From Oikopleura dioica (taxonomy: Eukaryota > Animalia > Chordata): a DNA stretch of 64,000 nucleotides. The notes under the pieces were generated by a model. The model saw only the letters and a list, made by a program, of their open reading frames with translations, made no database searches and was not told the DNA's origin. The position numbers and the translations under genes were made by a program. This document shows positions 11,501 through 48,197 of this stretch, piece by piece; the first letter of the stretch is position 1, and each line of letters begins with the position of its first letter. The stretch spans positions 3,658,001 through 3,722,000 of the forward strand of contig OU015566.1 in NCBI GenBank assembly GCA_907165135.1, read 5' to 3'.

Positions 11501-12133
11501 CGTCCAAGATTCCGAAACGAACCAACCAAGCTCTAGCGCTCAGCTAAGCGTTCTTCGCCACGAGCTGCGCCAGCGAGAAGAGCTCATTTCCCGCCTTGTA
11601 GACGACATCAGCAATATGAAGTCGACGCTGAAAAACAAAGACGACGAAATGTCGACAAAATTTAAGAAGTTCGCTGAGCGCGCGGAAGAGTATTCGGCGA
11701 ATTTGGTGATGGTGGCGCAGCTTCAAAAGTCGGAAAGGAAGTTGAAGAAAGATCTGAAGAAGGCGGAGAAGAGGGCGCTGGGAACATATGACGGCGATGA
11801 TGAATTGAAGGTGATTTTCTTTATCAATTTACTTTCAGAATAAGCGCAAGTTTGTAACTTGAGTATAATCTCTATATTCAGGAAATGCTGAAGCAAAAAA
11901 TCGACGAAATCAGCGCCCTGAAGTCTTCTCATCAAGAAGAGATCAAAAAGCTTAAATATCGCCGGAAATCCCGCCGTTCTCGTCGCTCTAAAGAACCTTC
12001 TGAACACCCAAACTCCACGCTTTCTTCTGAAATCAACGAAAATGCCAATCTTCTCCCTTCGCCAAAAATCGATGCTAAAGAAACAGCGGCGGAGGAAAAT
12101 CCAGACGATTATGTGACTTGTTCAATGATGTAA
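2512..12133 (+). CDS. Very large multi-exon coiled-coil protein, giantin/GOLGB1-like golgin; ends in a CaaX motif (CSMM*). Start and exon limits approximate
   Basis: Chain of E/K/L/Q-rich heptad ORFs (4152-4502, 4776-7550, 7760-8584, 8654-8890, 9083-9385, 10493-10996, 11025-11432, 11469-11843, 11885-12133) separated by short introns. RKLKAALLSRKEL resembles the giantin motif RKLQAALISRKE. Stop after DYVTCSMM at 12131-12133. Confidence 0.6.
3561..3719. mobile_element. 159-bp MITE, Tc1/mariner type (TA TSD, 25-bp TIRs), intronic
   Basis: TA|CAATGGTTGATCCTCGATTGGGAAG ... CTTCCCAATCGAGGATCAACCATTG|TA. Two further internal direct copies of CCTCGATTGGGAAG. Confidence 0.85.
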
Positions 12134-32684: not shown

Positions 32685-33578
32685 TTTTTTTCGAGAAATA
32701 GAGAAAAAAGGGTGGTGTTTATTTCTCAACCGGCAGTCGACCGATCGGTGCTCCGGTACCGGTGACGCAGCGACTCTTTCGCCACGAAAAAAGGCAATGT
32801 GAGAAGGATAATAATTATCCGATAATTTTTTATTCAAATTTTCATTTCAAATTTTTTTAGCAATAAAGCTGGAAAGCTTCGTTTCTCTCTCAAACGCCTC
32901 AAAAGCAAGAAATCGTTGCCAAAGATCTTCGTCGACATCAACTGGTCGGACTCGATGATCTTCTTTTTCGTTTTTGAGATCAATTAGATGCCAGTACTTC
33001 TTCTGCTTCTTGTTGATCTCCTATTGATAATTTTCTTTTATTGTTGGATCTAGGCGTACCTTGTTGATTTCACGGTTGGCTGAGTCAATATTTCGGAGAG
33101 TTTTTTCCACTTTGGAAAGTCTTCTGCTCGCTAAAATTGAAAAAGAAAATATTTCTTGTGCTTGTAAAAATTCAAACCGTTAATGATGAATCGAGCGTTC
33201 TCGATAAACTCATCATAATTTCGTCCTGCCTCCATCTTTCCCCTTTTCTTTCTCTTGAGATCACGAATGAAATGATGGAAAAGAACAAAAGTTGAGGAAA
33301 AACTCTTGTTATGAGCATCCTGAAAGATTATCAAGGATCTGAGGTTTCTCTGCTTTCTGATAAGGAGTTTCACATGAATAAGGCTCTCCCCTCAATATTG
33401 AATAAAATATAATAAATATCAATTATTTCTTTATAATTAATAAAATTCAAATAACTATTCTAAAAAATAATCTTATTTTTTATGATAATAAAATTTCTAA
33501 TTTTAATAATTTAAAAAAAATATATTTTATAAATTCATTGATTATTTTCATAGTAATCATTATATTATTCATAAAATA

Positions 33579-34303
33579 CAGTGAAAACCCATTTTAAGGC
33601 CGATTTTCGGATGACAGAGAATTTCAAAAGTGGCCTTAAATTGGATTTTTTTGTCTCGAGTCGGATGACAACAAATTTTTTCCATTCTTTGGATAAAAAA
33701 TGATGAATGAGGGTTATAGGGTTATCGCATATTTCTCTCGCTCGAAGAAAGTATAAATCATGGACTTTTTCCAAATGTGTCCTTTTAACTGAACTCAAGG
33801 TGATTATTTTTTTCATTATTTCAAAAATAATATTCGAAAAACACGTCTGAAAAAAGATAAACATGACAAATGCTAAGAAAAAAGATATGAAGAGATTCAA
33901 GTGAAGACGTCAAAGAATAGTGACGTGAAGAAGACAATTACTGAGCTTTTTCGATAGAAAAATGGTCTGTAAATTCGTCTGCGTGTTTATACACACCTAT
34001 TTAATGATAGATTGGAACTCTTGGACTCAAATCTAAGTCAAAATTTAAAGAGGACCGTAAGAAATCATCGTCAATTAAAAAATTCGAGAAAAAATCATCA
34101 TAGAGTACAAAAAAAGAGAAATAAAAATTATCATTTTTACCAACTCTGGATAAAACACAAGACATCCCGCAGTCGAATAATCAGATATTAAATAGAAATT
34201 GAAAGAAAGTGGCCTTAAAATGGATTTTTTGAGGACGACAGATTTTGGAGATTTTCCGAAAAAGTGGCCTTAAAAGGGCCGGCCTTAAAATGGGTTTTCA
34301 CTG
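33579..34303. mobile_element. 725-bp non-autonomous Tc1/mariner element (TA TSD, ~24-bp TIRs)
   Basis: TA|CAGTGAAAACCCATTTTAAGGCCG ... CGGCCTTAAAATGGGTTTTCACTG|TA. Subterminal repeats AAAGTGGCCTTAAA. No transposase ORF. Confidence 0.9.
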
Positions 34304-34430
34304 TAAAAAGGTTTTATAGCCCCTTTCAATTGAATATTAAAATAACGATCCTATATCTAAATAATTTCAAGAAGAAACAGAAGATGTCTAATTTTATTTA
34401 CACGGCAGTTCATTTCAATTCTTTCTTTAT

Positions 34431-36068
34431 TCAAAGCTCTTTCTCCGATTCCACGCCATACGCCTGGTACGTGTCCGTGCCACCCGTCAGCTCGAGTATT
34501 TTCTCAAAATTGTCCGTGTAGAACAAATAGCTCCAGTAGATCAGTGACAGAATGCCGAACGAAAGCGGGAAGAGCAATCGAGAGGTACGGTCAAGGCTTT
34601 TTGCCATTGTGCGATAATACTGAATTTTAAATCGAGTTTTGGATAGTTTATGGATTGAGCTTACATTTGAAGCTTGTACGTCTTCCTTAAGGGTGTCCTC
34701 TAGAATCTCTTTGACAGGCCGCGCAGGAACAGTCCTATGTCTCTTTGGAGCATGCTTATTGCAAGTTTAATCACCCCCTTTTTTGTCCAAATAACTCACC
34801 AGTTTCCTGACTACTTGATTGATCCCATTCGTCTGGTAGCCCTGCTTCTCTGAGTCTGGATACGGATTCATCATAATCATCATTCGCGTTTGAGTTTGGG
34901 CGCGAGGACCTCTTCCATTTTCATTTTCAACTCTCTCGACTGAAGATTGCTTGATGCTGGTTTTTGAAGAGTGGGAGTGGCAAGATATCATTCGTCGAAT
35001 TAGGCGGTCAATATGTTTTAGCTAGAACAAACTTGTTAAAAGACGAATGGTTCTTTAGGGTTAGGGTTAACCCTCAAGGGGCCTCATGACAAAAAATTGG
35101 ATAAGGGTAACGGTCAAGATAAGGGCAAAGGAAGCCATCTCAAAAGATAGGTGACGTTTTATATCTGACAGTTACATACAGTAAGACTTTGAATTTAAGA
35201 CATTTATGTTCTTTTATTCAAATGAGCTTACTTCATCCCACCCTTAATCTTTACAGAGGCTTCATTTAATCCAATTTTATTGAAAAGGAAGCTTCTGGAA
35301 AATAAGGGTTTCAGCCTTAATGGACCCCCAAGGCATTTGAAAAATATAATTCTTCATTTGAAAATGATAATTTTCGTTCAAACAAGTTCAATGATGTCAT
35401 TCCTAGCATATTGAAATGCATGAGCCTTTTTACATTGAACATGATGTCTAATTGTATCATCGCTAGGTTGGTTCAGCTAGGTACGTCAGATGCGATAATT
35501 GACGGATCATCCTGTATCTCACCTTGAGCTTCCTGCCATAAAGTATCCCCTCGGATTGTCTGGATAAGTAATTGGCGCACGCAAATTCTAGCAGAGCCGC
35601 GAAAACGTATGTGAGACAGAGCATTAGCCAGATGTCGATCGCTTTGACGTATGAAACCTTTGGCAGTGAACTTGCCGCTTTTAAAGCGGTTCTAGAGCGC
35701 TTTTTTCGTCCAAAATCACCAAGAAAAGAGAGCTCTAGAACCGTTCCTGAGCTACTCATCGATGAAATAGTCCAAACCGTTGTTATTCCTTAATAAATTA
35801 TTTCAATTTTATGTTCAAATTTAGTATTTAACTATTCTATTTAGACTAGAAAAGTGCCACCTTAGCAGCAAAAAGAGAGACTCTTAGCAGAATAAATTAA
35901 TGTTAATCCAAAGATAGTAATTAGCTATGTTGCGGTGGTTTCCCTTGAGTATTCTGAATAAGTAATTCGCAGGTACTAAATTGTGCCTGTATAAACGATG
36001 CATTATTGAGCTCACCAAGTGTTGTGCGAGCTGGAGTCGAGTCGATGTTCACCCAAAATCCGAGCCAG
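34431..36068 (-). CDS. Cys-loop ligand-gated chloride channel (glycine/GABA-A receptor-like), 3' exons only (end of M1 to M4), copy A
   Basis: [19 protein letters not shown]|[51 protein letters not shown], and M4 [23 protein letters not shown]. These match the GlyR pattern ARVGLGITTVLT...[17 protein letters not shown] at 34431-34433. Confidence 0.9.
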
Positions 36069-36307
36069 CTTTTTTTTGCGGAATCAAAATGATGGAATTG
36101 GGAAGGGCTTTTTGGGGGGCTTGCTCGTTTCTGATTGGCTGAGATGATAAATACTGGCTTCTGATTGGCTGAGAGGACCCCATAGCCCAAATGGCCCAGC
36201 GACTTCGAGATATCAATACCCTATGGCCCATAAGTTATGGGTTTCAAGTTGAAACTTTCAACAACGATCGGGTCGAAATTGGTCAAATCAGTGTTGACAC
36301 CCTTAAG

Positions 36308-36807
36308 NNNNNNNNNNNNNNNNNNNNNNNNNNNNNNNNNNNNNNNNNNNNNNNNNNNNNNNNNNNNNNNNNNNNNNNNNNNNNNNNNNNNNNNNNNNNN
36401 NNNNNNNNNNNNNNNNNNNNNNNNNNNNNNNNNNNNNNNNNNNNNNNNNNNNNNNNNNNNNNNNNNNNNNNNNNNNNNNNNNNNNNNNNNNNNNNNNNNN
36501 NNNNNNNNNNNNNNNNNNNNNNNNNNNNNNNNNNNNNNNNNNNNNNNNNNNNNNNNNNNNNNNNNNNNNNNNNNNNNNNNNNNNNNNNNNNNNNNNNNNN
36601 NNNNNNNNNNNNNNNNNNNNNNNNNNNNNNNNNNNNNNNNNNNNNNNNNNNNNNNNNNNNNNNNNNNNNNNNNNNNNNNNNNNNNNNNNNNNNNNNNNNN
36701 NNNNNNNNNNNNNNNNNNNNNNNNNNNNNNNNNNNNNNNNNNNNNNNNNNNNNNNNNNNNNNNNNNNNNNNNNNNNNNNNNNNNNNNNNNNNNNNNNNNN
36801 NNNNNNN
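36308..36807. other. Assembly gap (500 N)
   Basis: Run of N. Confidence 1.
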
Positions 36808-37090
36808 CTGATAAGGAGTTTCAAATGACTAAGGCTCTTCGCTCACTATTGAATAAAGTTAATATCAAATTTTTACTTATAATTAATAAAATTAAAATAT
36901 TTTTATTAAAAATAATATTTTTCATTATTAAAAATAATAATTATTTAATTGAATAAAAAGGGTAAGTAACCCGATTTTATTATATATTAAAATAAAGATA
37001 ACCTATGCGATCTTACATCGGAATAATTTTAGAGAAAACAGAAGATGTCTGATTTATTTACACGGCAGTTCATTTCAATTCTTTCTTAAT

Positions 37091-38642
37091 TCAATGCTCT
37101 TTCTCCGCTTCTACGCCATACGCCTGGTACGTGTCCGTGCCACCCGTCAGCTCGAGTATTTTTCAAAATTGTCCGTGTAGAACAAATAGCTCCAGTAGAT
37201 CAGTGACAGAATGCCGAACGAAAGCGGGAAGAGCAATCGAGAGGTACGGTCAAGGCTTTTCGCCATTGTGCGATAATACTGAATTTTAAATCGAGTTTTG
37301 GATAGTTTATGGATTGAACTTACATTTGAAGCTTGTACGTCTTCCTTAAGGGTGTCCTCTAGAATCTCTTTGACAGGCCGCGCAGGAACAGTCCTATGTC
37401 TCTTTGGAGCATGCTTATTGAAAGTTTAATCACCCTTTTTTGTCCAAATAACTCACCAGTTTCCTGACTACTTGATTGATCCCATTTGTCTGGTAGCCCT
37501 GCTTCTCTGAGTCTGGATACGGATTCATCATAATCATCATTCGCGTTTGGGTTTGGGCACGAGGACCTCGTCCATTTTCATTTTCAACTCTTTCGATGGA
37601 AGATTGCTTGATGCTGGTTTTGAAGAGTGGGAGTGGCAAGATATCATTCGTCGAATGAGGCGGTCAATATGTTTTAGCTAGAATAAATTGATTTTCGGAC
37701 GAATGATTTTTAGGGTTAGGGTTAACCCTTAAGCGACCTCATGACAAAAATTTTAAGAGTTAGGGTTAGGTAAAGGGCAATCTCAAAAGCTAAAATGATA
37801 TTTTACTGATAGCTTTATACAGTAAAACATTCAACTTAAGGCTCTCCCTCCCTTAATTCTAATAAGTTGTGTTTATCCGACGCTTTATTTTTTACATAGG
37901 CTTCATTTTATCCAATTAAATATTTGATTAAAGTGAAGCTTTTGGACAATAAGGGAATTTTCGTTCAAACAAGTTCAATGATGTGCATCCTAGCATATTG
38001 AAATGCATGAGTATTTTTACATTGAACATGATGTCTAATTGTATCATCGCTCCGGTTCAGCTAGGTACGTCAAATGCGATAATTGGCATCCTTTATCTCA
38101 CCTTGAGCTTCCTGCCATATAGTATCCCCTCGGATTGTCTGGATAAGTAATTGGCGCACGCAAATTCTAGCAGAGCCGCGAAAACGTATGTGAGACAGAG
38201 CATTAGCCAGATGTCGATCGCTTTGACGTATGAGACCTTTGGCAGTGAACTTGCAGCTTTGACACGGTTCTAGAGCGCTTTTTCGTCCAATATCATCATC
38301 AAAAAGAGCTCTAGAACCGCTCCTGAACTGCTCATTGACGAAATAGTCCAAACCGTGGTTATGCCTTAATTAATTATATCAATTTAGTGTTCAAATTTAG
38401 TATTTAACTATTCTATTTCGACTAAAAAGTGCCACCTTAGCAGCAAAAAGGTAGACTCTTAGCAGAATAAATTAATGTTAATCCAAAGATAGTAATTAGC
38501 TATTTCGCGGTGGTTTCCTTGAGTATTCTGAATAAGTAATTCGCAGGTACTAAATTGTGCCTGTATAAACAATGCATTATTGAACTCACCAAGTGTTGTG
38601 CGAGCTGGAGTCGAGTCGATGTTCACCCAAAATCCGAGCCAG
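37091..38642 (-). CDS. Second copy (B) of the same GlyR/GABA-A-like 3' exons; tandem duplicate or alternate haplotype
   Basis: Exons and introns are co-linear with copy A with scattered substitutions and indels. Homology extends to the 3' flank (36808 corresponds to ~33358). The Tc1 MITE is absent from this copy. Confidence 0.85.
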
Positions 38643-38844
38643 CTTTTTGCGGAATCAAGATTATGGATTTGAGAAGGGATTTTGGGGGACTTGCTCGTTT
38701 CTGATTGGCTGAGAGAATAAATATTGACTTCTGATTGGATGAGAGGACCCTATAACCCGAATGGCCAAGCGACTTCGAGATTTCAATTAAGAGTGTCAAC
38801 AACGATCAGATCGAAATTGGTCAAATCATTGTTGACACCCTTAA

Positions 38845-39214
38845 GGGGGTCGACGAGAATCGGGATTTCCGTGACCAAAAATGCGGGAAAACCGGATTAG
38901 ATAGGGAAAATCTGATGTTATTGATGGATAGAAAAGGGTTGAAAAAATCAGGCGGCGAAAACTAGAAAAATTTTCGCCAGAAAAATTGGTCAAAAATCCC
39001 CTCAAAGTAGGGGCATTTTCGCGAAAATGCACCAAAAATGGCGATTTTTTCACATTTTCTTAATTTCAACCCCTAAATCTCATTTTTATCAAATGTTTTT
39101 AGGCTCAACAGATTCGGGAGGATCTGACAATTCCAAAATATAAGTTTCATACCCAGACTATGTGTACAAGCGAAATTACGATCACCCCTGAAAAAATTCT
39201 CGTCGACCCCCCCC
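38845..39214. mobile_element. 370-bp MITE with TTAA TSD and GG termini (Kolobok-like)
   Basis: TTAA|GGGGGTCGACGAGAAT ... ATTCTCGTCGACCCCCCCC|TTAA. An adjacent 50-bp TTAA-flanked mini-element at 38791-38840 (GAGTGTCAACAA...TTGTTGACACCC) shares the TTAA at 38841-38844. Confidence 0.8.
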
Positions 39215-39267: not shown

Positions 39268-39574
39268 TGTTATGCGCTGCCTTGCAATGGTGTATCAATC
39301 TTGCAATAAAAACTAACGCATATTTTGGTATAACGTATTTTGTGTTTTATTTCATGTCTTGCACATGGTATGAAATGAGAACGTTACTGATCTGAAGGAA
39401 GGTGTCTTCCTTATATACTGATCGCTGAGCCCCCAGGCTATCCTACGCTGCATCCCGAGCCATCCAGGTTCTTATTGGTTGATCAATTATGCACGAGGCA
39501 TATCGTCAGGATGGAACGAGATGCTCAGGCTAACCTGGGCACTCAGCTGCATAAACATAAGTTATATCATAACA
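39268..39574 (-). repeat. 3' LTR (307 bp) of the giant retroelement
   Basis: 7-bp terminal inverted repeats TGTTATG (39268-39274) / CATAACA (39568-39574). On the minus strand TATATAA (39417-39411) precedes AATAAA (39351-39346), giving a U3-R-U5 layout. The polypurine tract abuts the LTR. Confidence 0.9.
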
Positions 39575-39587
39575 CTTTACCCTCCTT
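39575..39587 (-). promoter_or_regulatory. Polypurine tract (plus-strand primer) directly upstream of the 3' LTR
   Basis: Minus strand reads AAGGAGGGTAAAG|TGTTATG. Confidence 0.85.
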
Positions 39588-39640
39588 AGGGAATCTGGAA
39601 GAGAGAGACAGGAAAAGAAGTACAGTAAATTTTTAACTGG

Positions 39641-40260
39641 TTAAGCCTCATTGGATTTGGTGCTCGATGCCGACCACTTTCGTCTGTTACGTTGGATTTT
39701 TCGCATTCGTTGTCTGGTCCCTTTTCTAGCCGGAGTTGGCTCCATTTTTGGCAAGCCGGGTTTGACCACGCGTTTGGCGAGGATGATAGTAGAAGCGACC
39801 GCTTTAACGCGGATTTCGATCGCTTGGAGTTTGTCTTGGAGTTCGTTTCTTGGCAATGCTATTGGTCGAAATGGGATCTGACGTCGACCATACTTGGTTT
39901 GGAAAGCATCCGTGAGGTATGCGATCAGTCGGTCTCTGGTTTCATGGAAGGTCATATGGGCGACGATGATGGTTTTTGCGATCCAAGTAGAACGCATTGC
40001 TCGGTTTCTTGTCTTGGGATTTGATTCAGAAAGGCGTCCAGGAAAGCGTCAGAGTTTAAGTTCGGGATGGACCGGTAGGTGATGGCGGAAGCGGTGACTT
40101 TATCGATAAAATCGTACATGGCTTGGACGGGCTGCTCATCACGAAGGGTCATGGTTCCAATGGGTATTTCGATTCCGACCATTCTTGGGAGGAGCAGCGT
40201 TTTTACAATTCGTCGGTTTGACGCGGCTTGGATCGTTTGGATTTCTTTAAGGATTGACAT
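39641..40260 (-). CDS. Unknown ~205-aa protein with basic C-terminal tail; last ORF before the PPT (two ORFs joined by a -1 shift at T5 39973-39977)
   Basis: ORFs 39952-40260 and 39641-39997 overlap in frames differing by -1 at an A5 run. ATG is preceded by TTTTTAG-T. Tail RKGTRQRMRKIQRNRRK. Confidence 0.55.
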
Positions 40261-40483
40261 ACTAAAAATCGGATGTTGGATGAAAGTGGCCTATTTTAAA
40301 GGAGTGAGCGCTATTCATAAGGCATAAAGATTTTGTTTGAAGTTCGAAATAATGGGTACAGACATAAATGGGTGGCAGCTACTATATTCTGGGTGTTTAA
40401 GTTGTTGTTTGTCAGGATCGAGCGGGATTAACTACGTAATTGGTTAGTGTTGGTTTTGTAGCGCCATCGCGTTTATATAGTAA

Positions 40484-41403
40484 TCACCTTTTCCTTCTAT
40501 TCCCTTTCTCTTCTTCCTCCGAGTGTTCGAGGAGTTCTGCGATGTAGATTTGAAGCCGCCGGGTTCCCGCGTTCACAAGTCTTGCTATTTCCTTGACTGA
40601 CTTTGGTCGGTTTATTCGGTCGATATATACGTAGGTGCTGGCGGCGGCGAGCGTTTTTGCTGAGGTTGTGGCTGATGGGGTTTCTTTGCTTATCAGGATG
40701 GCATGCGCTTCGATTTCTTTCGCTTGGTGATTAGTTAATCGAAGCGCAGCTGCTATTCTTTGGATGTAAGGTTTGATTCTGTTTTTAATGTGTGCGTCGA
40801 TTTTTGCTGTTCTGAGGAAGGTATCGAATTTGCGAATCATTCTCTGGGTGATTAGGGAGAGGTGCCAGTTGCCTGGCAGATTTCTTCCAAGCTCAGGTCG
40901 CAGTTCTCTTGCTTACTGGCCAGGTAGAGGCACGCCGCTATTGCCACGGGTTCTGCGCGATTTTGGCGGTGGAAGTACCAAGTTGTTCCCTGTTTTTCTT
41001 TGAGGTATAGCTTTTTGATGAGTTCGTAAGCTCGTAGTTTTGTATTAGTGAGTCCTGAGTATATCAATCGGGCTCCTGCTTCTTCGATGAGGTCTTCACA
41101 TTCCCGAAGGACAGTTTGTAACCTATTTTTCTCGCGGTTGGATAGTTGGGCCTCGTTTGATATGATGCATTCGTCCCCTGTTTCTTCGTTATTCCGGGTG
41201 AAAGTTTTTGGCAAGTTTTCGTTTGGTTTGATGGCCGTCACTCGCATTGATTTTTCTGGGTTGAGTGGTGGGCATCTTTCTCCTACGACAAGTCCGCATA
41301 TTTTGCAGATAAGGTCTCCTGTCACAAGCCTTTCGTCGGCTATGTGCTTTGGGCCATGATATGAGCAGGTAAAGGCGGGAAGAGAGCAGCCTGGAGCAGA
41401 CAT
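40484..41403 (-). CDS. TFIIB-like general transcription factor (Zn ribbon + two cyclin folds), split by a 1-nt shift at 40855-40857
   Basis: CSYH...GDLICKICGLVVGER (TFIIB CPNH...GDMICPECGLVVGDR); AIAACLYLASKQEN..LSLEEIC; second repeat TLAAASTYVY...KSVKEIARLV. Adding one C at TCTCCCTAA fuses 40852-41403 with 40484-40840. Confidence 0.85.
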
Positions 41404-41440
41404 TCTAAAGCGTGTTTCGTTACAATTTGGTAGTCGAATT

Positions 41441-42412
41441 TTACGTCCGCCTGATTTTCCATTGTCTTGACAGAATTCTATGAATTATTTTAATCAGGTA
41501 AAACAGTCCGCCTGTTGCTAGCGTTAGAGTGCCCGCTAGGGTTGCACCGATCATGGTACAGGAGATAAACGTTTTTTCCGTGAATTTGTCGACAGTACAG
41601 ACGGACTCGGATTGGGCACATGCGTGCTGTGCTTTCCAGAAGAAGTAACGCGGGTCAGCAGGATCATATCCAGTTTCCGCGAAATTCCTCGTCTCTTTTT
41701 CTGATAGTATCGCGTATTTATCAATTTTGCAGATAAATGAAGCTGGGGTCTTCAACAGTTGTCCTGCCTTAAGGAGGGTCGTCCAAGGTGTTTCGTGGTT
41801 GTATTGGTGTTTGAGGAGCACAAAATTCATAATTAGAAAAATAAGGTCAATGACGCACAGACTGGTTAGGAACAAGATTCGTTTCCAGTTCGTTGATGGT
41901 GTCGTGATGACCAGGCGATTACCTTTGTATTTTTCTTTGAAGCCTTGCATATGCCCATATTTTGAGCGGAGTTCATTAAGCCTCTTCAGTTGAAATGTCC
42001 AGCTTGGCCGGTCCTGGCGATTTGGCCAGACGATTAATTCTGTCGGTTTTGGGTTTATGTCGTGTTCGAGTAATCGCATAAGCTGTACGTCTTCTGCGGG
42101 TTTCAGGATAAGATGTCCGAGCCCCAGAGTGACGATCCCAATAATGACGAGGTGCCAAGTCCAAAATCTAGTCAGGTTGACTGGTAAAAATTGGTTATAG
42201 CAAACTGAGCTACACAGTTGCTGTTTGGTGCTACATCTGAATCCGCCTGAATCGTTTGAATAAATTTCCGTACCAACTGTTAATAGGACAATACTTCTTA
42301 CCAGCAAAGTTGCGTACCAGACTTTACCGAGGGGACCGAGGTGTGGGAGCAAATCATTGAGCCCAGAAAGCAGCCCACTTGCCTTTTCTCCGATAATTTT
42401 ATGTTTATCCAT
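41441..42412 (-). CDS. Connexin (gap junction protein), intronless, 323 aa
   Basis: LGKVWYATLLVRSIVLL (TM1). EL1 with exact C-x6-C-x3-C: FRCSTKQQLCSSVCYN, then RFW. EL2 FIC...CAQSESVCTVDKFTEKT (cf. PCPNTVDCFISRPTEKT). Four hydrophobic segments. Confidence 0.92.
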   Translation of the reverse strand: MDKHKIIGEKASGLLSGLNDLLPHLGPLGKVWYATLLVRSIVLLTVGTEIYSNDSGGFRCSTKQQLCSSVCYNQFLPVNLTRFWTWHLVIIGIVTLGLGHLILKPAEDVQLMRLLEHDINPKPTELIVWPNRQDRPSWTFQLKRLNELRSKYGHMQGFKEKYKGNRLVITTPSTNWKRILFLTSLCVIDLIFLIMNFVLLKHQYNHETPWTTLLKAGQLLKTPASFICKIDKYAILSEKETRNFAETGYDPADPRYFFWKAQHACAQSESVCTVDKFTEKTFISCTMIGATLAGTLTLATGGLFYLIKIIHRILSRQWKIRRT

Positions 42413-42458
42413 TCTGACTCTGAACAGTTTAAGATTGGAGGGGCTTTAGTTCGAGAGT

Positions 42459-42671
42459 TTATGGAGTTCGGGTAGGTGCAGATGGGATCAAGATTTCTTC
42501 TTCGGGGGCCTCCCGATTCTGGGTTTTACTTATCCCTAGTTTTCGTTTGATCTTGTCGCGGAGAGGAACTCTCCGGGTCACCTGCTCCCTTCCCTCAATC
42601 GTCGGGTCAGCTGGTGTTGCTAGGCAAAGGCACGAGAGCCATTTATGCCAGAATTGCGGAGCGAGATGCAT
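42459..42671 (-). CDS. Small unknown protein with CLC motif and C-terminal PSAP
   Basis: MHLAPQFWHKWLSCLCLAT...EEEILIPSAPTRTP*. ATG at 42671 is preceded by an AG acceptor-like motif. Confidence 0.4.
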   Translation of the reverse strand: MHLAPQFWHKWLSCLCLATPADPTIEGREQVTRRVPLRDKIKRKLGISKTQNREAPEEEILIPSAPTRTP

Positions 42672-42764
42672 AGTCTTTTTCAATCTGAATGTTCGGTATT
42701 GGACTCTCAGTTCCGATTTACTTGCGGTTAATGCGGGCTTAATTATAATTAAAGCTAAGGGATT

Positions 42765-43622
42765 CTAGCGATTAATAGCGCGTCTTGGTCTTGTTTGTAT
42801 GCCACCGTAGGGTACGTGCAGGTTCCCTAGTTTAGCTGCAAGCGCTCTGAAGGTTAAATCTTGGGTTCCGTCGCTGCTCTTATATTTGACAAGGGTATGG
42901 AACTCGGCAGGGCCACAGTTCTGTAGGAGAATAGGGTAAATTATTCTGAGGGCCGCGGCGTCTGATAGTGGTTCTTCGCCAGGTGACTTTTGCAGATCTG
43001 CGCAGAGTCGTCCGAAGAAAATGATCAGGGCTTCGCCTTCTTTGCGTTTTCCGTTTACTTCATTCCCCTTATTATGGTTTTGATGTTTCGCTGAAATACA
43101 TTTCTTCATTCTCTCGATGCAAAGCTCGAGTTTGGTTTTTTCATTCCTATTTAGGCCTTTCTCGAGGTGTGCAAACTCTGGTCTGAGAGTCATAAACAAA
43201 AGACGAGTGAGATCAACATCTAGAAGCCCACATTTTCTTGCGCTGTTGAACCCTTGTCTGTTTCTTGCCACATGTTGTGCGAAGCTGATTTTTTCGTTTG
43301 GTCCCCATACATAGAGCCGGAATTTTTCCTTGGCGTCGAGGTATGGCAAGTCTCGATCGTATACCAGGTTCGTGGTAAGAATCTTCCTCATCCGATCTAC
43401 GCATAGATCAAAATTTGTTTTCTCAATTTCGTCGAGGAGAGTCTCGTAACTCCTTTGTTCTGGTGTCAGTGTTATGAGAAAGAGACTTGTCAATTGTTCG
43501 TCGGAGAGCCCTGCTTTCCGTGCGTCCCGGAATCCTTGTTGGTTCCTCGAGACATGGTTCTCGAAAAAAATGTTTTCGGTAGGAAGCCATACGTAGAGCT
43601 GAAATGTGTTTGTGGAGAGCAT
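42765..43622 (-). CDS. Gag capsid-domain paralog with tandem duplicated N-terminal capsid-like repeat
   Basis: Repeats FQLYVWLPTENIFFENHVSRN...GLSDEQLTSLFLITLTPE and FRLYVWGPNEKISFAQHVARN...GLLDVDLTRLLFMTLRPE match Gag FQLKNWKTEENITYWEHLTRN...GLTDSQMVSLFMLTLRPE. Then KRKEGEALIIFFGRL matches Gag KRRPQESLLAFFIRL. Likely ATG at 43622 (TTTAG-A-ATG). Confidence 0.85.
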   Translation of the reverse strand: MLSTNTFQLYVWLPTENIFFENHVSRNQQGFRDARKAGLSDEQLTSLFLITLTPEQRSYETLLDEIEKTNFDLCVDRMRKILTTNLVYDRDLPYLDAKEKFRLYVWGPNEKISFAQHVARNRQGFNSARKCGLLDVDLTRLLFMTLRPEFAHLEKGLNRNEKTKLELCIERMKKCISAKHQNHNKGNEVNGKRKEGEALIIFFGRLCADLQKSPGEEPLSDAAALRIIYPILLQNCGPAEFHTLVKYKSSDGTQDLTFRALAAKLGNLHVPYGGIQTRPRRAINR

Positions 43623-43694
43623 TCTAAACATCATAGTGCTATCCTTTGGTATATTTTAATTTAGGTGGTTTCTGAATCTGTTGCAACTTCAATC

Positions 43695-44024
43695 TTATAG
43701 GGGGGTGTTGCAGTACTTGCAGTAAGGTCTGTTTGCTAGCCATTTTCGCAGGCACGCATTATGGTAGTAGGCGTAACAGCATGTCATGACCGATATGTCT
43801 TCAGGCAGGTCTTCCTGGCAGAGCCCGCAATCACTTTCGTACTTTTCTACTGCGCTTATCTTGATTTTCTTTGTCAGCATGAGCCTTTCCTCCAATTCTT
43901 CGCCTTCGACTTTCCTGAAGATGATTTTTATTTCAATGAGCGATCCGTCCGGTTCGAGGCGGAAATGTGAGTTGATGTTGTCATATTCTTCCTTCTTTTC
44001 AAGTATATTTACCGCATCGAGCAA
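43695..44024 (-). CDS. RING-finger protein (variant RING-H2); start uncertain (no ATG in frame)
   Basis: CGLCQEDLPEDISVMTCCYAYYHNACLRKWLANRPYCKYC. Confidence 0.7.
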   Translation of the reverse strand: MLDAVNILEKKEEYDNINSHFRLEPDGSLIEIKIIFRKVEGEELEERLMLTKKIKISAVEKYESDCGLCQEDLPEDISVMTCCYAYYHNACLRKWLANRPYCKYCNTPL

Positions 44025-44071
44025 CGATTCGTACTTAACTTTATGTTTCTTTTCCAGCCAATCCTTAATTG

Positions 44072-44539
44072 TTATTGGGATGGTTCCTTTCGGCTTAACC
44101 TAAAGTATTTTCGGGTCATGTTCAATCTGTTCTCGTTTACCGGTAAGATGCATAGTGGGCAAGAATCCTTCCATATGAGCCAGTTTCGTAGACAATGTTG
44201 GTGAAAGAAGTGTCCACAGGTGGGTATAAGGTTTGCTGTTTTGTCAAATTCTTCCAGGCAAATGCGGCAGGGGTCGCCTACCTCTTTTTCCCATTCTGTC
44301 AATTCAATGCGTGAAAGTGAGTCTAAGAGTGCTTGCAGTTCCTCGCACGTGGCTCCTCCTTCAACGAATTGTTGCAAAGTTCTTGTTCCATCTGGGTTGA
44401 TTACTTCTAGGCGCCCTATTTTCTTCGGTGGTGTCATTATTTCTTCCAAGAAACATGGCAGTGTTTGTTCCTTCTGCCTTGAATTATGCGGTGATTCTTC
44501 GTTTTCAGTTTGTGCTGCTTCCTCTTGGTTCTCGTCCAT
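44072..44539 (-). CDS. RING-H2 E3 ubiquitin ligase-like protein
   Basis: CRICLEEF...CGHFFHQHCLRNWLIWKDSCPLC. ATG preceded by TTAAG-T. Confidence 0.9.
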   Translation of the reverse strand: MDENQEEAAQTENEESPHNSRQKEQTLPCFLEEIMTPPKKIGRLEVINPDGTRTLQQFVEGGATCEELQALLDSLSRIELTEWEKEVGDPCRICLEEFDKTANLIPTCGHFFHQHCLRNWLIWKDSCPLCILPVNENRLNMTRKYFRLSRKEPSQ

Positions 44540-44591
44540 ACTTAACAGGGTAAGTTAAGAGTGTCAGAGTTATCTTTTTCTTATTATTATT

Positions 44592-45366
44592 TTATTTTGC
44601 TATGATTTCCTGGCAAATTGGACAGGTATTTTTGTGGAGAAGCCATTTTAGGATGCAGTGAGTGTGGAAAGTGTGCCCGCACGAGGGGAGGAATGAACAG
44701 CACTTGGCCGCGAATTCTTCCATGCAGATGCCGCAAGGGTATTCAAGAGTCTCATGCATGGTGGAATGTCGAAGTGTGTCCTCGCGTCTTTCATATTCGC
44801 GAGTCCCAATTTCTTCAATTGTTTTTTGTTTATGTCTACGCTTCCCATTTGGTATGAGGTATCTTCCTTGGCACTGTCCCCGAATACCTTCTATTTCTCC
44901 TACCCTTGGCTGTGGTCTCATTTTCAATTGATTCCGTCCTTCAAGGTTAACAGAAGTCGGTGCCTTTTTGAAACTGTTCTTTTCTTCTAAAAGCCCGGAC
45001 GTCTTTCTGCCTGTTGGGTCTTTCGGTGGTTCCGTTGATGGAGTAGGCCCCGGTGTTTGGGCGTTTTCATTTGTTTCACCCTGATTAATTTTTTACTTTT
45101 TCCCAACCATCTAGGGCACTTACATGTGCAGAGGTTCGACAGTTACTAAGTTCCATCAAGTGTTTGATTTGGCTGATTGCCCTCTCGTGGTTTGCAACGA
45201 TTTTGAAGAGAATCTCTCCATTGTTGTAACCGGTCTTGTCTACCACGTCTTCTTTTTTCCATTTTCCTATTAGATCGATGAACTTACTGTTGCAATTCGG
45301 GCAATTCCAGGGTTTTCGAATCTCCTCGCAATTCAGGTTACAACCTAAGCAGCGAAAGCTAGCCAT
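44592..45366 (-). CDS. RNF115/RNF126-like protein: N-terminal C4 zinc finger + C-terminal RING-H2, interrupted by a frameshift near the A6 run 45089-45094
   Basis: FRCLGCNLNCEEIRKPWNCPNCNSKFIDLI (cf. RNF126 FFCHCC...YICPRCESGFIEEL). RING CGICMEEF...CGHTFHTHCILKWLLHKNTCPIC. The frame between 45090 and 44927 is open in the RING frame. Confidence 0.7.
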
Positions 45367-45415
45367 CTGAAATCGGGTTCAGGTTAAGATCGGTAACTCT
45401 GATTGTTCAAGCAGT

Positions 45416-45892
45416 CTACTCCCGCCGGGCGGTAATAAAACAGACTATTTTGAGATGCTTCTGAATGGTTTGGGCTGTTGCCAGAATTTGCGCTGTGGAG
45501 AAGTTCCATTGCTGTGCTACTTTCCTCGCCGACATTGGTGTTGGCGAAAATTTGTATGCTAAGTACGCGGATGATGCAGCAATTCTTTTCGGGCTCGCTT
45601 TGATGTTGGGGTGCCAGGCATGGTCGGCTATTTGTCTTGCCCGAGTGATCCAATCCGAATCAGCGAGATGAGCTTGTTGATCGATGTATTTTCTTGCAAT
45701 CTCTAGCTCGTTTTTGGTCTCCTTGTTGAATCGTGTCCGTACTAACGGTGCGGTTTTGTAAATCATCCAATTTGGGCATTTCAGCATTTCTCCGATCGCT
45801 GTTGTTGTTTTTGGCTCTGGCGAAAATTTGTACGCCAAATAAACTGCGCTGGTCACGATACCTTTTGGGGAAAGCTTTGGGTCAGTTGTCAT
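45416..45892 (-). CDS. Second TFIIB-core-like protein (two cyclin-fold repeats, no zinc ribbon); frame open ~37 codons further upstream
   Basis: Internal repeat SPKGIVTSAVYLAYKFSPEPKTTTAIGEML / SPKRIAASSAYLAYKFSPTPMSARKVAQQW resembles TFIIB [31 protein letters not shown]. Confidence 0.65.
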   Translation of the reverse strand: MTTDPKLSPKGIVTSAVYLAYKFSPEPKTTTAIGEMLKCPNWMIYKTAPLVRTRFNKETKNELEIARKYIDQQAHLADSDWITRARQIADHAWHPNIKASPKRIAASSAYLAYKFSPTPMSARKVAQQWNFSTAQILATAQTIQKHLKIVCFITARRE

Positions 45893-46422
45893 TACTCGTT
45901 TAACGACAAGTTTGGCATAATTGTAGATTTGGTTCGGAAGGAGGTGCTTGTAGGATTTGAGTAGCTCGAGATGAACGGATTCCTCCTTAGGGAAGATTAG
46001 CTCTTATCATTTTGTTTATTTACCTTTATTTCCGGCTCGGTTTTTTGGAGCTAGGTTCGAATCTCTTGGGGAGCTCATTTTCAATCTTGAAAGAAATCTT
46101 ATTAATTCCGGTTTTCAGTGATAATTCCTTATAATCGATTGGTGTTTTCAGATGTGGTTGTTGGGTATGGTTGTAGGAGGGGGATGGTTAGCCCGGAAAT
46201 ACATATGGTTCAGGGTTATTGAAAGGCAGGTGGGAAGACTGTTTCGAAGAATTTGTCTACGTTTCCGTCTCCGATGAGATTCTCCGTTGGCATCTGGATT
46301 GGTTGTTCCCTTGTTGTCGGCTGGATTTGAGTGGTGTGTTGCCCGGGGAAAATTTGTGTTGTCTGAGTTGTTGGTCCCGGAATTGCTACAGACGGATCCA
46401 TTCGGGCGATTTTCTAGATTGT

Positions 46423-47037
46423 TTAATTTCGGGACACATCTTGCAAGCTTACCTTCGGTGGCTCCGCGCCTACGCCCTGTCTGGGTAGTTTCTGTCGTCT
46501 CATCATGAGATTGAAGTACAGGTGTGCGAATATTGTTTTAGGGCTCCAGTAAGCCGGTGTTTGTACGTTTGCCAATCGAGGAAACACGACTTGCACTATT
46601 TTTCGATAGCCTTCCTCGTGAAGAGGTGAGTGACCGTGGCTTTTCATAAAGCCTATCGCGGTTCCCATTAGAAGTCCTCCTTGTTCTGCAGGCAGGTCTC
46701 GACCCTCGGACAATTCTTCGAGGGTTTGCTTCACTGCCTCTATCATAGCGTCGATCCCAATTTTGCTACCGAGGAATTTGTCTTGAGTTCCTCCGCATCC
46801 TTCCCCGAATGCTCTACCACGGTCAAGTCCCTTCGCGGCGAGCTCCTCTTTGGGCATTGCAGTTGGTTGATTCATGACAAGGGAGAGGATGTAATTTCCT
46901 CCGGTTTGCTTCATTCTTAAATTACTTTTTGTCAGCAAATGCTTTCTAAAAGACGTTGACTTGTTTAAGACGGAAGGAAATGAGTTCGGGGAAGTATTAT
47001 CCAGCTTTTCTCTTATCGCTGGGAAAGTGTCAGACAT
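46423..47037 (-). CDS. Unknown 204-aa protein
   Basis: Clean ATG-stop ORF co-oriented in the cassette. No motif recognised. Confidence 0.55.
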   Translation of the reverse strand: MSDTFPAIREKLDNTSPNSFPSVLNKSTSFRKHLLTKSNLRMKQTGGNYILSLVMNQPTAMPKEELAAKGLDRGRAFGEGCGGTQDKFLGSKIGIDAMIEAVKQTLEELSEGRDLPAEQGGLLMGTAIGFMKSHGHSPLHEEGYRKIVQVVFPRLANVQTPAYWSPKTIFAHLYFNLMMRRQKLPRQGVGAEPPKVSLQDVSRN

Positions 47038-47570
47038 GCAGGTTTAACAGGTTTTTTCGGGTATCTTCCAGTGATTCTTCATTTTTTATTTTTGTGTACG
47101 CCTCTTCGATGATTGCCGGAATCGATTCTATTCCCGTGTTTACGTCGCGAGCGAATTCCTTGGCGACCGCTGGTTCTTGAACATTGATGCTCCCAATTTC
47201 TTTGATGATCGCGCGATCAAAACCTTCTTTTTTGCCAAGGGCTTTTCAACTTTCTTTGCATAGTTCGGAATGCGATCAGCAGTGCGAGGTCCTTGGTGGA
47301 AGACAAAGTTGTTGTCGCTAGTCGTTGTCTCGGCAGTTTCGCTATTGTTGCTTGTTCCTGCCAAGTTTGGGATCTTAGCCATAGTTCGGCTTTCTGGTTT
47401 ACCAAATGAACGGCGTCTCTCAGGGGACGCTGCCATTCTTCTTCAGCATTGAAACCAATCAACTTCGGTTTCCCCAGGATTTCTCGTACGATAATTTCTT
47501 GGAAGGAGGAAAGCTTGATCGCGTCTTCCGCTGTTCCAATGATAATATTGTCAATTTTTGCCTGTTCCAT
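47030..47570 (-). CDS. Unknown family X protein, copy 1 (probably extended past 47217 by a -1 shift at T6 47228-47233)
   Basis: Ungapped by-eye alignment with 58393-58752 (GT....I.LS.F.E...R.IL.KP...EEW..P...AV...E.WL..QT...LA...L.ST.DL...IAFR..QR.L). The -1 frame continues EGFDRAIIKEIG...LHV*. Confidence 0.6.
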
Positions 47571-47629
47571 TTGTTCTTAAAAGAAGGAACAATTACTCAA
47601 TTTGCTCTTTAGCTTCTTATAATTCGTGG

Positions 47630-48163
47630 TTAGAAGAAACGCAGTGGGACTGTTTGGTTGCAGTACGGACAGCGCGAGCAGCGTGGTTGGTTTAACCACT
47701 TGCGAATACAACCTTGATGAAAAACATGATTACAACGTAGGCAAGCAAGGTTGTTGAAGAGTCCTTCCTGGCATATTGCGCAGATGTCCACTTCCTTTTG
47801 GCGTTGCTTGTCCACGGGAAAGTCCTTACCGCCTTCCTTTTCGGTTCTTAGCTTCTCTTTGGGCGAGGAGGGCGTCGGAATGCGGAATCGCATCATCTTA
47901 AATACGTGATTCATTAAGCCGCTCTATTTTTTCTGTTTGCTCTTTACCAGGTCGGTGTTTAAGGACTTAAGCTTCTCCCAGTGCCTTTTCTCTATCGTCA
48001 GAGTCCACTTGATTTGTCCCAGGGTGGTCCAGTTTGTATTTGAATCTCGTGTGCTGGCTCGATCATTGATTATTTCGATGAAATCGCTATTGCAATTTCT
48101 ACAGCCGTCTTCGAAATTTATGGACGCCCATTGAGTGTTGCAATAAGCGCATCTGTACCGCAT
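47630..48163 (-). CDS. Second RNF115/RNF126-like zinc finger + RING-H2 protein, with one in-frame TAG at 47924-47926
   Basis: MRYRCAYCNTQW...GCRNCNSDFIEII; same frame continues TAG AGC GGC TTA ATG into CAICQEGL...CNHVFHQGCIRKWLNQPRCSRCPYC. ATG preceded by CCTTCAG. Confidence 0.75.
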
Positions 48164-48197
48164 CTGAAGGGAGCCTGTTACCTATTCACGTCTTTTA

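What the first reader, a model, noticed from the sequence alone, without database searches (positions are those of the whole stretch)
41441..42412. A full-length connexin encoded by a retroelement
Seen: 323-aa intact, intronless ORF with four TM segments and all six extracellular cysteines (EL1 C-x6-C-x3-C exact; EL2 with a ~35-aa insertion between the first and second Cys), plus the TEKT motif. Established: connexins are chordate gap-junction/hemichannel proteins. Ichnoviruses captured innexins (vinnexins), but I know of no connexin in a retroelement. Inference: it could alter coupling of the host cell, act as a dominant-negative, or support cell-to-cell spread in an element with no env.
Basis: partly seen in the sequence, partly recalled or inferred. 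Interest (0 to 1): 0.9.

Follow-up and report, generated by a model that had tools for sequence, protein, structure and literature searches.

The report
Connexin gene inside giant LTR retroelement
An intact gene for a gap-junction channel protein (connexin) lies as cargo between the polymerase gene and the end repeat of a very large retrovirus-like mobile element in a tunicate-like genome; related elements in ocean samples carry one too, and I found no earlier report of a retroelement carrying this kind of cell-to-cell channel.

Summary
The ORF is real: window 41441-42412, on the MINUS strand, 323 aa. It passes the Pfam Connexin cut-off (66 vs 31 bits). It has four TM helices and the exact EL1 Cys motif. 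EL2 has three Cys with a ~31-residue insert, followed by TEKT. The model (pLDDT 89) matches only connexin structures.

It lies in a 24-kb block (39.3-63.45 kb). There 78% of the minus strand is ORF and coding strands are A-rich even at fourfold sites, unlike the host genes of the window. The block holds gag, pol (RT-RNaseH-IN) and many small cell-like genes (CKS, four RING, TFIIB-like). It ends in a purine tract plus a 307-nt TG...CA LTR, 1.87 kb after the connexin. The 5' LTR is not in the window.

Look-ups by connexin protein alone found marine metagenome contigs with intronless connexins two ORFs after an intact pol. Two lineages keep the gene and its neighbours open although synonymous sites are saturated. 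The closest named relative (47%) is an intron-bearing chromosomal Oikopleura dioica connexin with the same EL2 insert.

Verdict: a true connexin cargo gene of an LTR retroelement family, unreported. This copy's element is decayed, and the gene's function is inferred only.

The parts
41441..42412 (-). Connexin ORF, 323 aa, intact, intronless
   Evidence: ORF; Pfam Connexin 66 bits; PDB connexins; AF2 model and Foldseek; Cys and TEKT positions
42414..42427 (-). Two splice-acceptor-like motifs (pyrimidines then AG) just upstream of the connexin ATG
   Evidence: Upstream sequences; YYYAG within 12 nt of the ATG in 11 of 38 minus-strand ORFs against 11.6% of all ATGs, P=0.003; inference only
39268..63450 (-). 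The retroelement as far as the window shows it (5' end not reached; at least 24 kb)
   Evidence: Continuous A-rich coding strand; minus-strand ORFs cover 78% against 20% for plus; fourfold-site A>T bias in nearly all of its ORFs
39268..39574 (-). 3' LTR, 307 nt, TGTTATG...CATAACA termini, TATA-like box and AATAAA inside; the far end is inferred from the inverted termini only
   Evidence: Sequence read; only copy in the window; its first 18 nt plus the purine tract are identical in L002
39575..39587 (-). Polypurine-tract-like run directly before the LTR
   Evidence: Sequence read; part of the 29-nt stretch identical in L002 3448-3476
52508..55871 (-). pol (RT, RNase H, integrase zinc finger and core); broken by two frame changes, no internal stops seen
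   Evidence: Pfam RVT_1 105 bits, RT_RNaseH_2 74 bits, rve, Integrase_H2C2; 3 HSPs in 3 frames against the intact pol of L011
56034..57882 (-). gag: 451-aa main ORF, CCHC zinc knuckle read in a second frame (one frame change; programmed or a break, not decidable)
   Evidence: ORFs; zf-CCHC E=0.001
40484..41403 (-). TFIIB-like gene directly downstream of the connexin (zinc ribbon plus cyclin-like repeat), in two pieces (one frame change)
   Evidence: PDB TFIIB E=5.6e-7; weak Pfam TFIIB and Zn_Ribbon_TF hits
42765..43634 (-). 289-aa ORF directly upstream of the connexin, no recognisable family
   Evidence: Nothing significant in Pfam (one hit at E=0.073, far below its cut-off), no PDB match
43695..44927 (-). 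Three consecutive RING-finger ORFs (109, 155, 111 aa)
   Evidence: Pfam zf-RING_2: 29.9, 47.2 and 45.6 bits
47630..47914 (-). Fourth RING-finger ORF (94 aa)
   Evidence: Pfam zf-RING_2 33.2 bits
45416..45892 (-). Second, weak TFIIB-repeat-like ORF
   Evidence: Pfam TFIIB E=0.0047, below cut-off
61105..61413 (-). CKS (cyclin-dependent kinase regulatory subunit) ORF, upstream of gag
   Evidence: Pfam CKS 92.4 bits
62519..63422 (-). Small-GTPase-like region (weak; possibly one gene in two frames)
   Evidence: Pfam Ras 24.1 bits, cut-off 21.6; no PDB match for the second piece

Best explanation
The ORF is a genuine connexin-family gene carried as cargo in the accessory region of a very large Ty3/gypsy-type LTR retroelement. 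That region lies between pol and the 3' LTR, and the host is a tunicate, probably a larvacean. SHOWN: family membership and fold; position inside the element; shared composition with the element; related elements in marine metagenomes that keep an intronless connexin at a fixed place downstream of an intact pol, across divergence that has saturated synonymous sites. INFERRED: (1) The gene came from a larvacean-specific connexin subfamily marked by a ~31-residue insert in extracellular loop 2, through reverse transcription of a spliced host mRNA. The element copies have no introns, whereas the chromosomal O. dioica member has several. (2) It is expressed from the element's long transcript through an acceptor site placed just before its ATG, by cis- or trans-splicing, like the other small ORFs. 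(3) The protein assembles into connexons in element-expressing cells and, by co-assembly with or docking onto the host's connexins of the same subfamily, changes junctional coupling or hemichannel activity to the element's benefit. The virus-borne innexins of ichnoviruses do this for their carriers. The copy in this window belongs to a decayed element (pol broken), so here the gene is most likely a still-intact relic.
For: Connexin identity. Inside the element: gag and pol on the same strand upstream. There is no LTR or other repeat between pol and the connexin. A purine tract plus TG...CA LTR lies 1.87 kb downstream, where the ORF array and the A-rich skew end. The 29-nt tract-plus-LTR start is identical in L002, again just after a connexin-bearing ORF array. 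Fourfold-site A:T is 46:26 in the connexin, like the element's other ORFs, against 129:167 in the window's host ORFs, Fisher P=0.0024. Relatives: L003-L006 and L011-L013 on one hand and L007-L010 on the other share the order pol - ORF - ORF - connexin - three more ORFs, all on one strand and without introns, with intact pol. Between the two lineages pol is 71% and connexin 44% identical in protein. dS is saturated in six of the seven ORF pairs and 2.4 in the seventh. All seven ORF pairs are open and all six loop Cys are invariant. Within one lineage the connexin shows 4 nt and 1 aa differences, dN/dS 0.09. The EL2-insert clade has 100/100 NJ bootstrap support and window+O. dioica P0001 has 89/100. 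P0001 has host-type neighbours and several introns. Acceptor-like motifs before ATGs.
Against: Only one LTR is in the window, so no LTR pair, primer-binding site or target duplication ties the ends together; the LTR's far end rests on a 7-nt inverted repeat. More than 5 kb of ORFs lie upstream of gag, which is not the usual layout and could mean a composite element. No close copy of this element's own connexin was available, so selection in this lineage is untested. With two breaks in 3.4 kb of pol, an open 0.97-kb ORF is expected by chance about half the time. The dN/dS at population level rests on four differences. The direction of transfer is open: the intron-bearing O. dioica gene nests among element-borne genes in the tree, so it could be a domesticated element gene with later intron gain. 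The metagenome contigs have no known host. Expression and channel function are not shown at all.
Confidence: 0.72

Rival explanations
1. Passenger without a role: the connexin was transduced into the element by chance and is carried along neutrally, in this lineage at least. Its intactness here is luck.
For: This copy's pol has two frame changes and at least one cargo gene is split, so the copy is not under selection as a whole. At that break density an open 0.97-kb ORF is not surprising. No close copies of this lineage's connexin could be compared.
Against: Two other element lineages keep the connexin open, with all six loop Cys, at the same place, across saturated synonymous divergence. Within-lineage dN/dS is 0.09. 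The window connexin has taken on the element's fourfold-site bias, which implies long residence.
Confidence: 0.15
2. Host gene cluster or operon: the connexin and its small neighbours are ordinary host genes on one strand, and a gag-pol element merely landed among them.
For: Larvaceans have dense same-strand operons (general knowledge). Cell-type genes (CKS, RING, TFIIB-like) lie on both sides of gag-pol. No LTR pair is seen.
Against: No LTRs flank gag-pol closely. The only LTR comes after the whole ORF array, with a purine tract. All ORFs of the block share an A>T bias at fourfold sites that the window's clear host genes lack. Unrelated contigs again put a connexin right after pol.
Confidence: 0.06
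3. Composite or nested structure: the block is two or more elements (or an element plus a piece of an endogenous DNA virus) joined by recombination or nesting. In that case the connexin belongs to a different unit from the gag-pol seen here.
For: The size is unusual (at least 24 kb). ORFs lie upstream of gag. The gene set (TFIIB-like, RING, CKS) recalls large DNA viruses.
Against: No DNA-virus hallmark genes in any ORF scanned. There is a single strand, a single compositional class and no internal LTR remnants. In L003 and L007 the connexin is 1.5 kb from pol.
Confidence: 0.05
4. Assembly artefact: the element-bearing sequence is wrongly joined to this scaffold or is a contaminant.
For: A 500-N gap at 36308-36807 separates the clear host genes from the element side, and near-duplicate 2-kb segments flank the gap.
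Against: This would change the neighbours, not the finding: connexin, pol and LTR lie on one gap-free stretch (36808-64000). The duplicated segments on both sides of the gap support the join.
Confidence: 0.02

Closest known systems
Chromosomal connexin of Oikopleura dioica, CAG5111107.1 (P0001; OKI2018_I69 chr2 g5441)
   Same: Closest relative found (47% identity, E=1.3e-73; named). It has the same EL2 insert and the same six loop Cys and is sister to the window protein in 89 of 100 NJ bootstraps.
   Different: It lies among trypsin, C-lectin and EGF genes on mixed strands, with no gag or pol within 10 kb either side. It has several small introns and a longer C-terminal tail.
Tor elements (Ty3/gypsy Oikopleura retrotransposons), PMC4402516
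   Same: LTR retroelements of a larvacean with gag, pol and a further gene downstream of pol. That gene is expressed by splicing from the 5' LTR or from an internal promoter.
   Different: Tor's extra gene is an envelope glycoprotein. No connexin or array of cell-like genes is described for Tor. No named Tor protein came back in the pol search, so membership is untested.
Vinnexins of ichnoviruses (polydnaviruses), PMC8402728
   Same: Gap-junction protein homologues carried by a virus-like entity and derived from the host lineage's own junction proteins; reported to disturb host cell functions.
   Different: They belong to the innexin family, not the connexin family (Pfam gives Connexin only). 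The carrier is a dsDNA polydnavirus of wasps, not a retroelement, and the hosts are arthropods, not chordates.
LTR retrotransposons with additional ORFs (bdelloid rotifers PMC5408684; plants PMC7264820; Retand lineage with long pol-to-LTR region PMC11963269)
   Same: Extra reading frames between pol and the 3' LTR, and long internal regions.
   Different: Those have one or a few extra ORFs, mostly of unknown or element-related kind. Here there are about 25 small ORFs after pol and about 9 before gag, several clearly cell-derived (connexin, CKS, RING, TFIIB-like).
Oncogene-transducing retroviruses (general knowledge, not tested here)
   Same: Intronless copy of a cellular gene inside a retroviral genome, as expected from capture of a spliced mRNA.
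   Different: Such captures are recent, usually cripple the virus and are not conserved. Here the gene is kept across deeply diverged element lineages with intact pol.

Membership tests
Connexin (Pfam PF00029) | Profile score above the curated cut-off | tested here: met
   66.1 bits against 31.3. The match stops at residue 201 because of the EL2 insert.
Connexin (Pfam PF00029) | Four transmembrane helices with an N-terminal helix; protomer fold | tested here: met
   AF2 pLDDT 89.2. The 50 best Foldseek matches listed are all connexins, aligned over about 300 columns, TM 0.63-0.81.
Connexin (Pfam PF00029) | EL1 C-x6-C-x3-C | tested here: met
   Cys 60, 67, 71; invariant in 40 aligned connexins.
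Connexin (Pfam PF00029) | EL2 with three Cys in canonical spacing (C-x4/5-C-x5-C) | tested here: inconclusive
   Three Cys are present (228, 265, 272) but spaced x36 and x6. The same layout occurs in the whole clade, including a host gene.
Connexin (Pfam PF00029) | Hexameric connexon and intercellular channel | not testable with these tools
   Only a monomer model was made.
LTR retroelement of Ty3/gypsy type (Metaviridae-like) | gag with CCHC knuckle; pol with order RT - RNase H - integrase | tested here: met
   The protease was not recognised by Pfam.
LTR retroelement of Ty3/gypsy type (Metaviridae-like) | Two long terminal repeats with TG...CA ends | tested here: inconclusive
   One LTR with TG...CA ends at 39268-39574. 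No second copy in the window; the 5' end lies beyond base 64000 or is lost.
LTR retroelement of Ty3/gypsy type (Metaviridae-like) | Polypurine tract directly before the 3' LTR | tested here: met
   Purine-rich run at 39575-39587, conserved with L002.
LTR retroelement of Ty3/gypsy type (Metaviridae-like) | Primer-binding site and target-site duplication | not testable with these tools
   Both need the 5' end, which is outside the window.
Tor elements of Oikopleura | Pol groups with named Tor1-Tor4 sequences | not testable with these tools
   The pol search returned no named Tor protein. No comparator was fetched.
Vinnexin / innexin | Innexin-family sequence | tested here: not met
   Pfam reports Connexin only. 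The likeness is one of role, not of family.

The most novel reading that the evidence does not exclude
The connexin stands in for the missing envelope gene. Placed in the membrane of element-expressing cells (or around budding particles), its enlarged EL2 docks specifically onto the host's own EL2-insert connexin. EL2 is the loop that sets docking partners. Junction formation, followed by the normal internalisation of junction plaques into one partner cell, would then carry element material from somatic cells into neighbouring germ-line cells. Together with about 30 further small genes (CKS, TFIIB-like, RING, GTPase-like), each apparently served by its own acceptor site, this would be a 'complex' retroelement of a gene richness so far known only from DNA viruses.
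Probability: 0.1. Interest if true: 0.95.

Novelty: new variant of a known kind. Interest (0 to 1): 0.8.

Why it matters
Connexins are regarded as purely cellular, chordate-only proteins. The only virus-borne gap-junction proteins described are innexin homologues of polydnaviruses. A connexin kept under constraint inside retroelements would show that retroelements can also exploit cell-cell channels. It would also give a natural experiment on what the docking loop EL2 does. The carrier itself is remarkable: at least 24 kb, about 38 ORFs on one strand, several clearly taken from the cell (cell-cycle, transcription and ubiquitin genes). That is far more accessory coding capacity than is described for LTR retroelements. 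Larvacean genomes are shaped by strong compaction and by Tor elements active next to the germ line, so such cargo may bear on how elements reach the germ line. Finally, the chromosomal O. dioica connexin nested among element-borne ones raises the possibility of gene traffic in both directions.

Tried and rejected
(1) Word-indexed protein search with the connexin: no hit at all, not even itself, so the window's genome is not in that collection. The full HMMER scan was needed.
(2) LTR pair: three repeat searches and a local alignment of the 3' LTR against the likely places found no second copy.
(3) I first took the 2-kb direct repeats at 34.3-38.8 kb for LTRs. Rejected: they flank a 500-N assembly gap and have no relation to the element's end.
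(4) I first took the A-rich plus-strand block at 4-12 kb for a second element. Rejected: no protein similarity to the element or to the loci and no A>T bias at fourfold sites. It is a host gene for a charged coiled-coil protein.
(5) dN/dS between the two metagenome lineages: dS is saturated in six of seven ORF pairs, so only a qualitative statement is possible.
(6) Other cargo ORFs of the window against the related loci: no similarity at E<1e-4 apart from pol and connexin.
(7) Rfam and tRNA scans of the element: nothing.
(8) A simple purine-run pattern to find LTR starts in L003, L007 and the other loci: nothing. The end of L002's LTR could not be placed.
(9) Naming the source organism: the ABC-transporter ORF has no relative above 35%. 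It is therefore not an annotated O. dioica; I write 'larvacean-like tunicate' on the strength of the connexin tree only.
(10) Literature: no paper holds connexin + retrotransposon + Oikopleura, nor 'connexin homolog' + 'virus-encoded'.

Full report
OBSERVATION. The ORF exists at exactly the stated coordinates but on the minus strand: ATG at 42412-42410, stop at 41443-41441, 323 codons. The nearest upstream in-frame stop is 11 codons before the ATG. No other connexin-like sequence is in the window.

WHAT THE PROTEIN IS. Pfam Connexin scores 66.1 bits, against a curated cut-off of 31.3. phmmer against all PDB sequences returns connexins only, best Cx43 at E=1.9e-13. Cys 60, 67 and 71 give the exact EL1 motif. 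Cys 228, 265 and 272 are the three EL2 cysteines, spaced x36 and x6 instead of x4/5 and x5, and TEKT follows at 278. An AlphaFold2 model built on 40 aligned connexins has mean pLDDT 89.2 and pTM 0.84. It shows an N-terminal helix, four long helices and a folded EL2 insert with pLDDT about 80. The 50 best Foldseek PDB matches listed are all connexin protomers aligned over about 300 columns. The cytoplasmic tail after TM4 is only about 13 residues. (The model and alignments A1 and A2 lack Met1, so their numbering is one lower.)

RELATIVES.
- A full HMMER scan of 1.84 billion representatives finds 420 proteins at E<=0.001 but only two at E<=1e-30.
- The best hit (47% identity) is a chromosomal Oikopleura dioica protein, CAG5111107.1.
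- The next hits (25-33%) are unnamed proteins from marine metagenome assemblies. Then come Ciona and vertebrate connexins at about 20-28%.
- The EL2 insert is shared by the window protein, the O. dioica protein and the metagenome proteins P0002-P0005. It is absent from the next relatives.
- This clade has 100/100 NJ bootstrap support, and window plus O. dioica has 89/100.
- The O. dioica gene lies among trypsin, lectin and EGF genes on mixed strands and is interrupted by several small introns.

CONTEXT IN THE WINDOW. From about 39.6 to 63.45 kb the plus strand has an AT skew of about -0.25. Minus-strand ORFs of 75 aa or more cover 78% of this block, plus-strand ones 20%. In the host part of the window both strands stand near 30%.

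In 5'-to-3' order on the minus strand the block holds:
- a weak small-GTPase-like region;
- a clear CKS gene (92 bits);
- several ORFs without family;
- gag with a CCHC knuckle;
- pol with RT, RNase H and integrase;
- about 25 further small ORFs, among them four RING fingers, two TFIIB-like genes and the connexin. The TFIIB-like gene next to the connexin matches the TFIIB zinc ribbon in PDB at E=5.6e-7.

No ORF downstream of pol is long enough or hydrophobic enough to look like an envelope glycoprotein.

The array ends at a purine-rich run followed by a 307-nt unit that starts TGTTATG and ends CATAACA. This unit contains a TATA-like box and AATAAA. I read it as polypurine tract plus 3' LTR. 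The connexin stop is 1.87 kb upstream of it. No second LTR copy is in the window. The element therefore runs past base 64000 or has lost its 5' end, and at least 24 kb of it is seen.

INDEPENDENT SUPPORT FROM COMPOSITION. At fourfold-degenerate sites the element's ORFs prefer A over T (skew +0.10 to +0.68, with two exceptions near zero). The connexin has 46 A against 26 T (+0.28). The two clear host ORFs of the window have 129 A against 167 T (-0.13); Fisher P=0.0024. The connexin has thus taken on the element's synonymous-site signature.

RELATED LOCI. I looked up contigs by connexin proteins only.
- P0153/P0005 (L003-L006, L011-L013) and P0004 (L007-L010) lie on Tara and other marine metagenome contigs of up to 10.8 kb.
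- Both sets have the same layout: an intact pol (RT, RNase H, integrase), two small ORFs, the connexin, then three more ORFs, all on one strand and without introns.
- Contigs within a set are 99.3-99.8% identical over their whole length. They are therefore variants of one sequence found in several samples.
- Between the two sets pol is 71% and connexin 44% identical in protein. Synonymous sites are saturated in six of the seven ORF pairs (dS 2.4 in the seventh), yet all seven ORF pairs are open. All six loop Cys are kept.
- Within one set the connexin differs by 4 nt and 1 aa (dN/dS 0.09; few sites).
- The window's pol is 32% identical to that of L003 over 745 residues, so this is a third, distant lineage.
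- P0002 (L002, L015) and P0003 (L014) also sit in compact same-strand arrays.
- In L002 the 29 nt that span the purine tract and the LTR start are identical to the window's, about 390 nt after the last ORF.
- The hosts of these contigs are unknown. No contig looked human.

EXPRESSION SIGNALS (INFERENCE). A pyrimidine-rich motif ending in AG lies within 12 nt of the ATG in 11 of 38 minus-strand ORFs, the connexin included. The background is 11.6% of all ATGs on that strand (P=0.003), and plus-strand ORFs show it in 3 of 31 cases. A similar '...TTAGA ATG' pattern recurs in the related loci. This fits splice-acceptor use for each small ORF, either from a leader in cis, as in complex retroviruses and some Tor elements (PMC4402516), or in trans, as in larvacean operons (general knowledge). 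It is not shown.

STATE OF THIS COPY (COUNTS ONLY).
- pol: two frame changes and no internal stop, relative to an intact relative.
- gag: the zinc knuckle is read in a second frame (one frame change, possibly programmed).
- The TFIIB-like gene next to the connexin: two pieces (one frame change).
- The GTPase-like region: possibly two pieces.
- The connexin: unbroken.
At this break density an open 0.97-kb ORF is expected about half the time. Its intactness here is therefore no evidence of selection on this copy; the evidence for constraint comes from the relatives.

MECHANISM. Best supported: a connexin of a larvacean-specific subfamily was taken up as a spliced cDNA into the accessory region of an LTR retroelement and has been kept there. 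The protein most likely forms connexons that mix with, or dock onto, the host's connexins of the same subfamily, and so changes coupling or hemichannel activity in element-expressing cells. The capture and the conservation are supported by data; the cell-biological effect is inference by analogy with vinnexins (PMC8402728). Transfer of particles or genomes through the pore itself can be set aside on pore size (established knowledge). Rivals: a neutral passenger, a host operon, a composite element and a mis-assembly. They are weighed in their own sections. The direction of transfer (host to element, or element to host for the O. dioica gene) stays open.

COMPARISON WITH WHAT IS KNOWN. The carrier works like a Tor-type or Ty3/gypsy-type element with extra genes after pol. 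Membership of Tor could not be tested, because no named Tor sequence came back. Extra ORFs in LTR elements are known (PMC5408684, PMC7264820, PMC11963269), but not in this number and not connexins. Virus-borne gap-junction proteins are known only from the innexin family. Full-text searches found no report of a connexin in a retroelement or virus. I rate it a new variant of known kinds.

STEPS LEFT OUT, AND A SLIP.
- I did not look up contigs by the element's own pol relatives, although intact ones of 72-73% identity exist (P0294, P0295).
- I did not scan any collection with the LTR-junction pattern, and I did not search the viral contig collection for connexins.
Exon-like blocks of the host gene P0001 were only mapped and counted.
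- Slip: my first notebook entry and two scripts give coordinates of the separate reading-frame pieces of the broken pol, gag and TFIIB-like genes. That shows roughly where the frames change.

VERDICT. The finding is a real and, as far as I can find, undescribed case of a connexin carried by LTR retroelements, set in an unusually gene-rich element. Its function is still to be shown.

Noticed in passing
window 39268-63450 (minus strand): The element itself is extraordinary: at least 24 kb and about 38 ORFs of 75 aa or more on one strand. About 9 ORFs lie upstream of gag (CKS, GTPase-like) and about 25 downstream of pol (four RING fingers, two TFIIB-like genes).
   Followed up: partly
window 36308-36807 and flanks 33357-36307 / 36808-38845: A 500-N assembly gap is flanked by near-duplicate segments (86% overall, blocks of 96-98%). 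This is either a haplotype duplication made by the assembler or a true tandem repeat. It lies 420 nt beyond the element's LTR.
   Followed up: partly
window 85-1120 and 1305-2354: Inverted repeat with arms of about 1 kb at 98% identity, with further internal repeats at 900-1530; a foldback or transposon-like structure.
   Followed up: no
window 4152-12133 (plus strand): An A-rich coding block with ORFs of 924, 274 and 167 aa that give only weak coiled-coil-type Pfam hits. The A-richness vanishes at fourfold sites, so it comes from the amino-acid make-up. It is a host gene unrelated to the element.
   Followed up: yes
window 16163-17161 (+), 18629-18701 (+), 21836-24676 (-): Host genes: an angiotensin-converting-enzyme-like exon (178 bits), tRNA-Val(AAC), and an ABCA-type transporter read as one 946-aa ORF. 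The transporter's best relative is only 35% identical, so the source genome is not among annotated genomes.
   Followed up: partly
window 39557-39585 and L002 3448-3476: A 29-nt stretch (purine tract plus first 18 nt of the LTR) is 100% identical between two elements whose connexins are only 31-33% identical. It is probably the conserved integrase and plus-strand-primer site.
   Followed up: partly
window 63611, 39565, 36238 (minus strand): The 9-mer ATAACTTAT from the LTR start occurs three times on the minus strand and never on the plus strand, with about 0.25 occurrences expected per strand. The one at 63611 continues like the L002 LTR start for 12 nt. Its meaning is unknown.
   Followed up: no
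L001 9797-10000: The annotated O. dioica connexin model (P0001) seems to lack its N-terminus. The window protein's residues from about 10 onward already align upstream of the annotated start.
   Followed up: no
L002 533-1198 and 2394-3059; L015 2475-3143: In the P0002-type array the connexin is flanked on both sides by C2H2 zinc-finger ORFs of 222 aa. The cargo differs between lineages while the connexin is kept.
   Followed up: no
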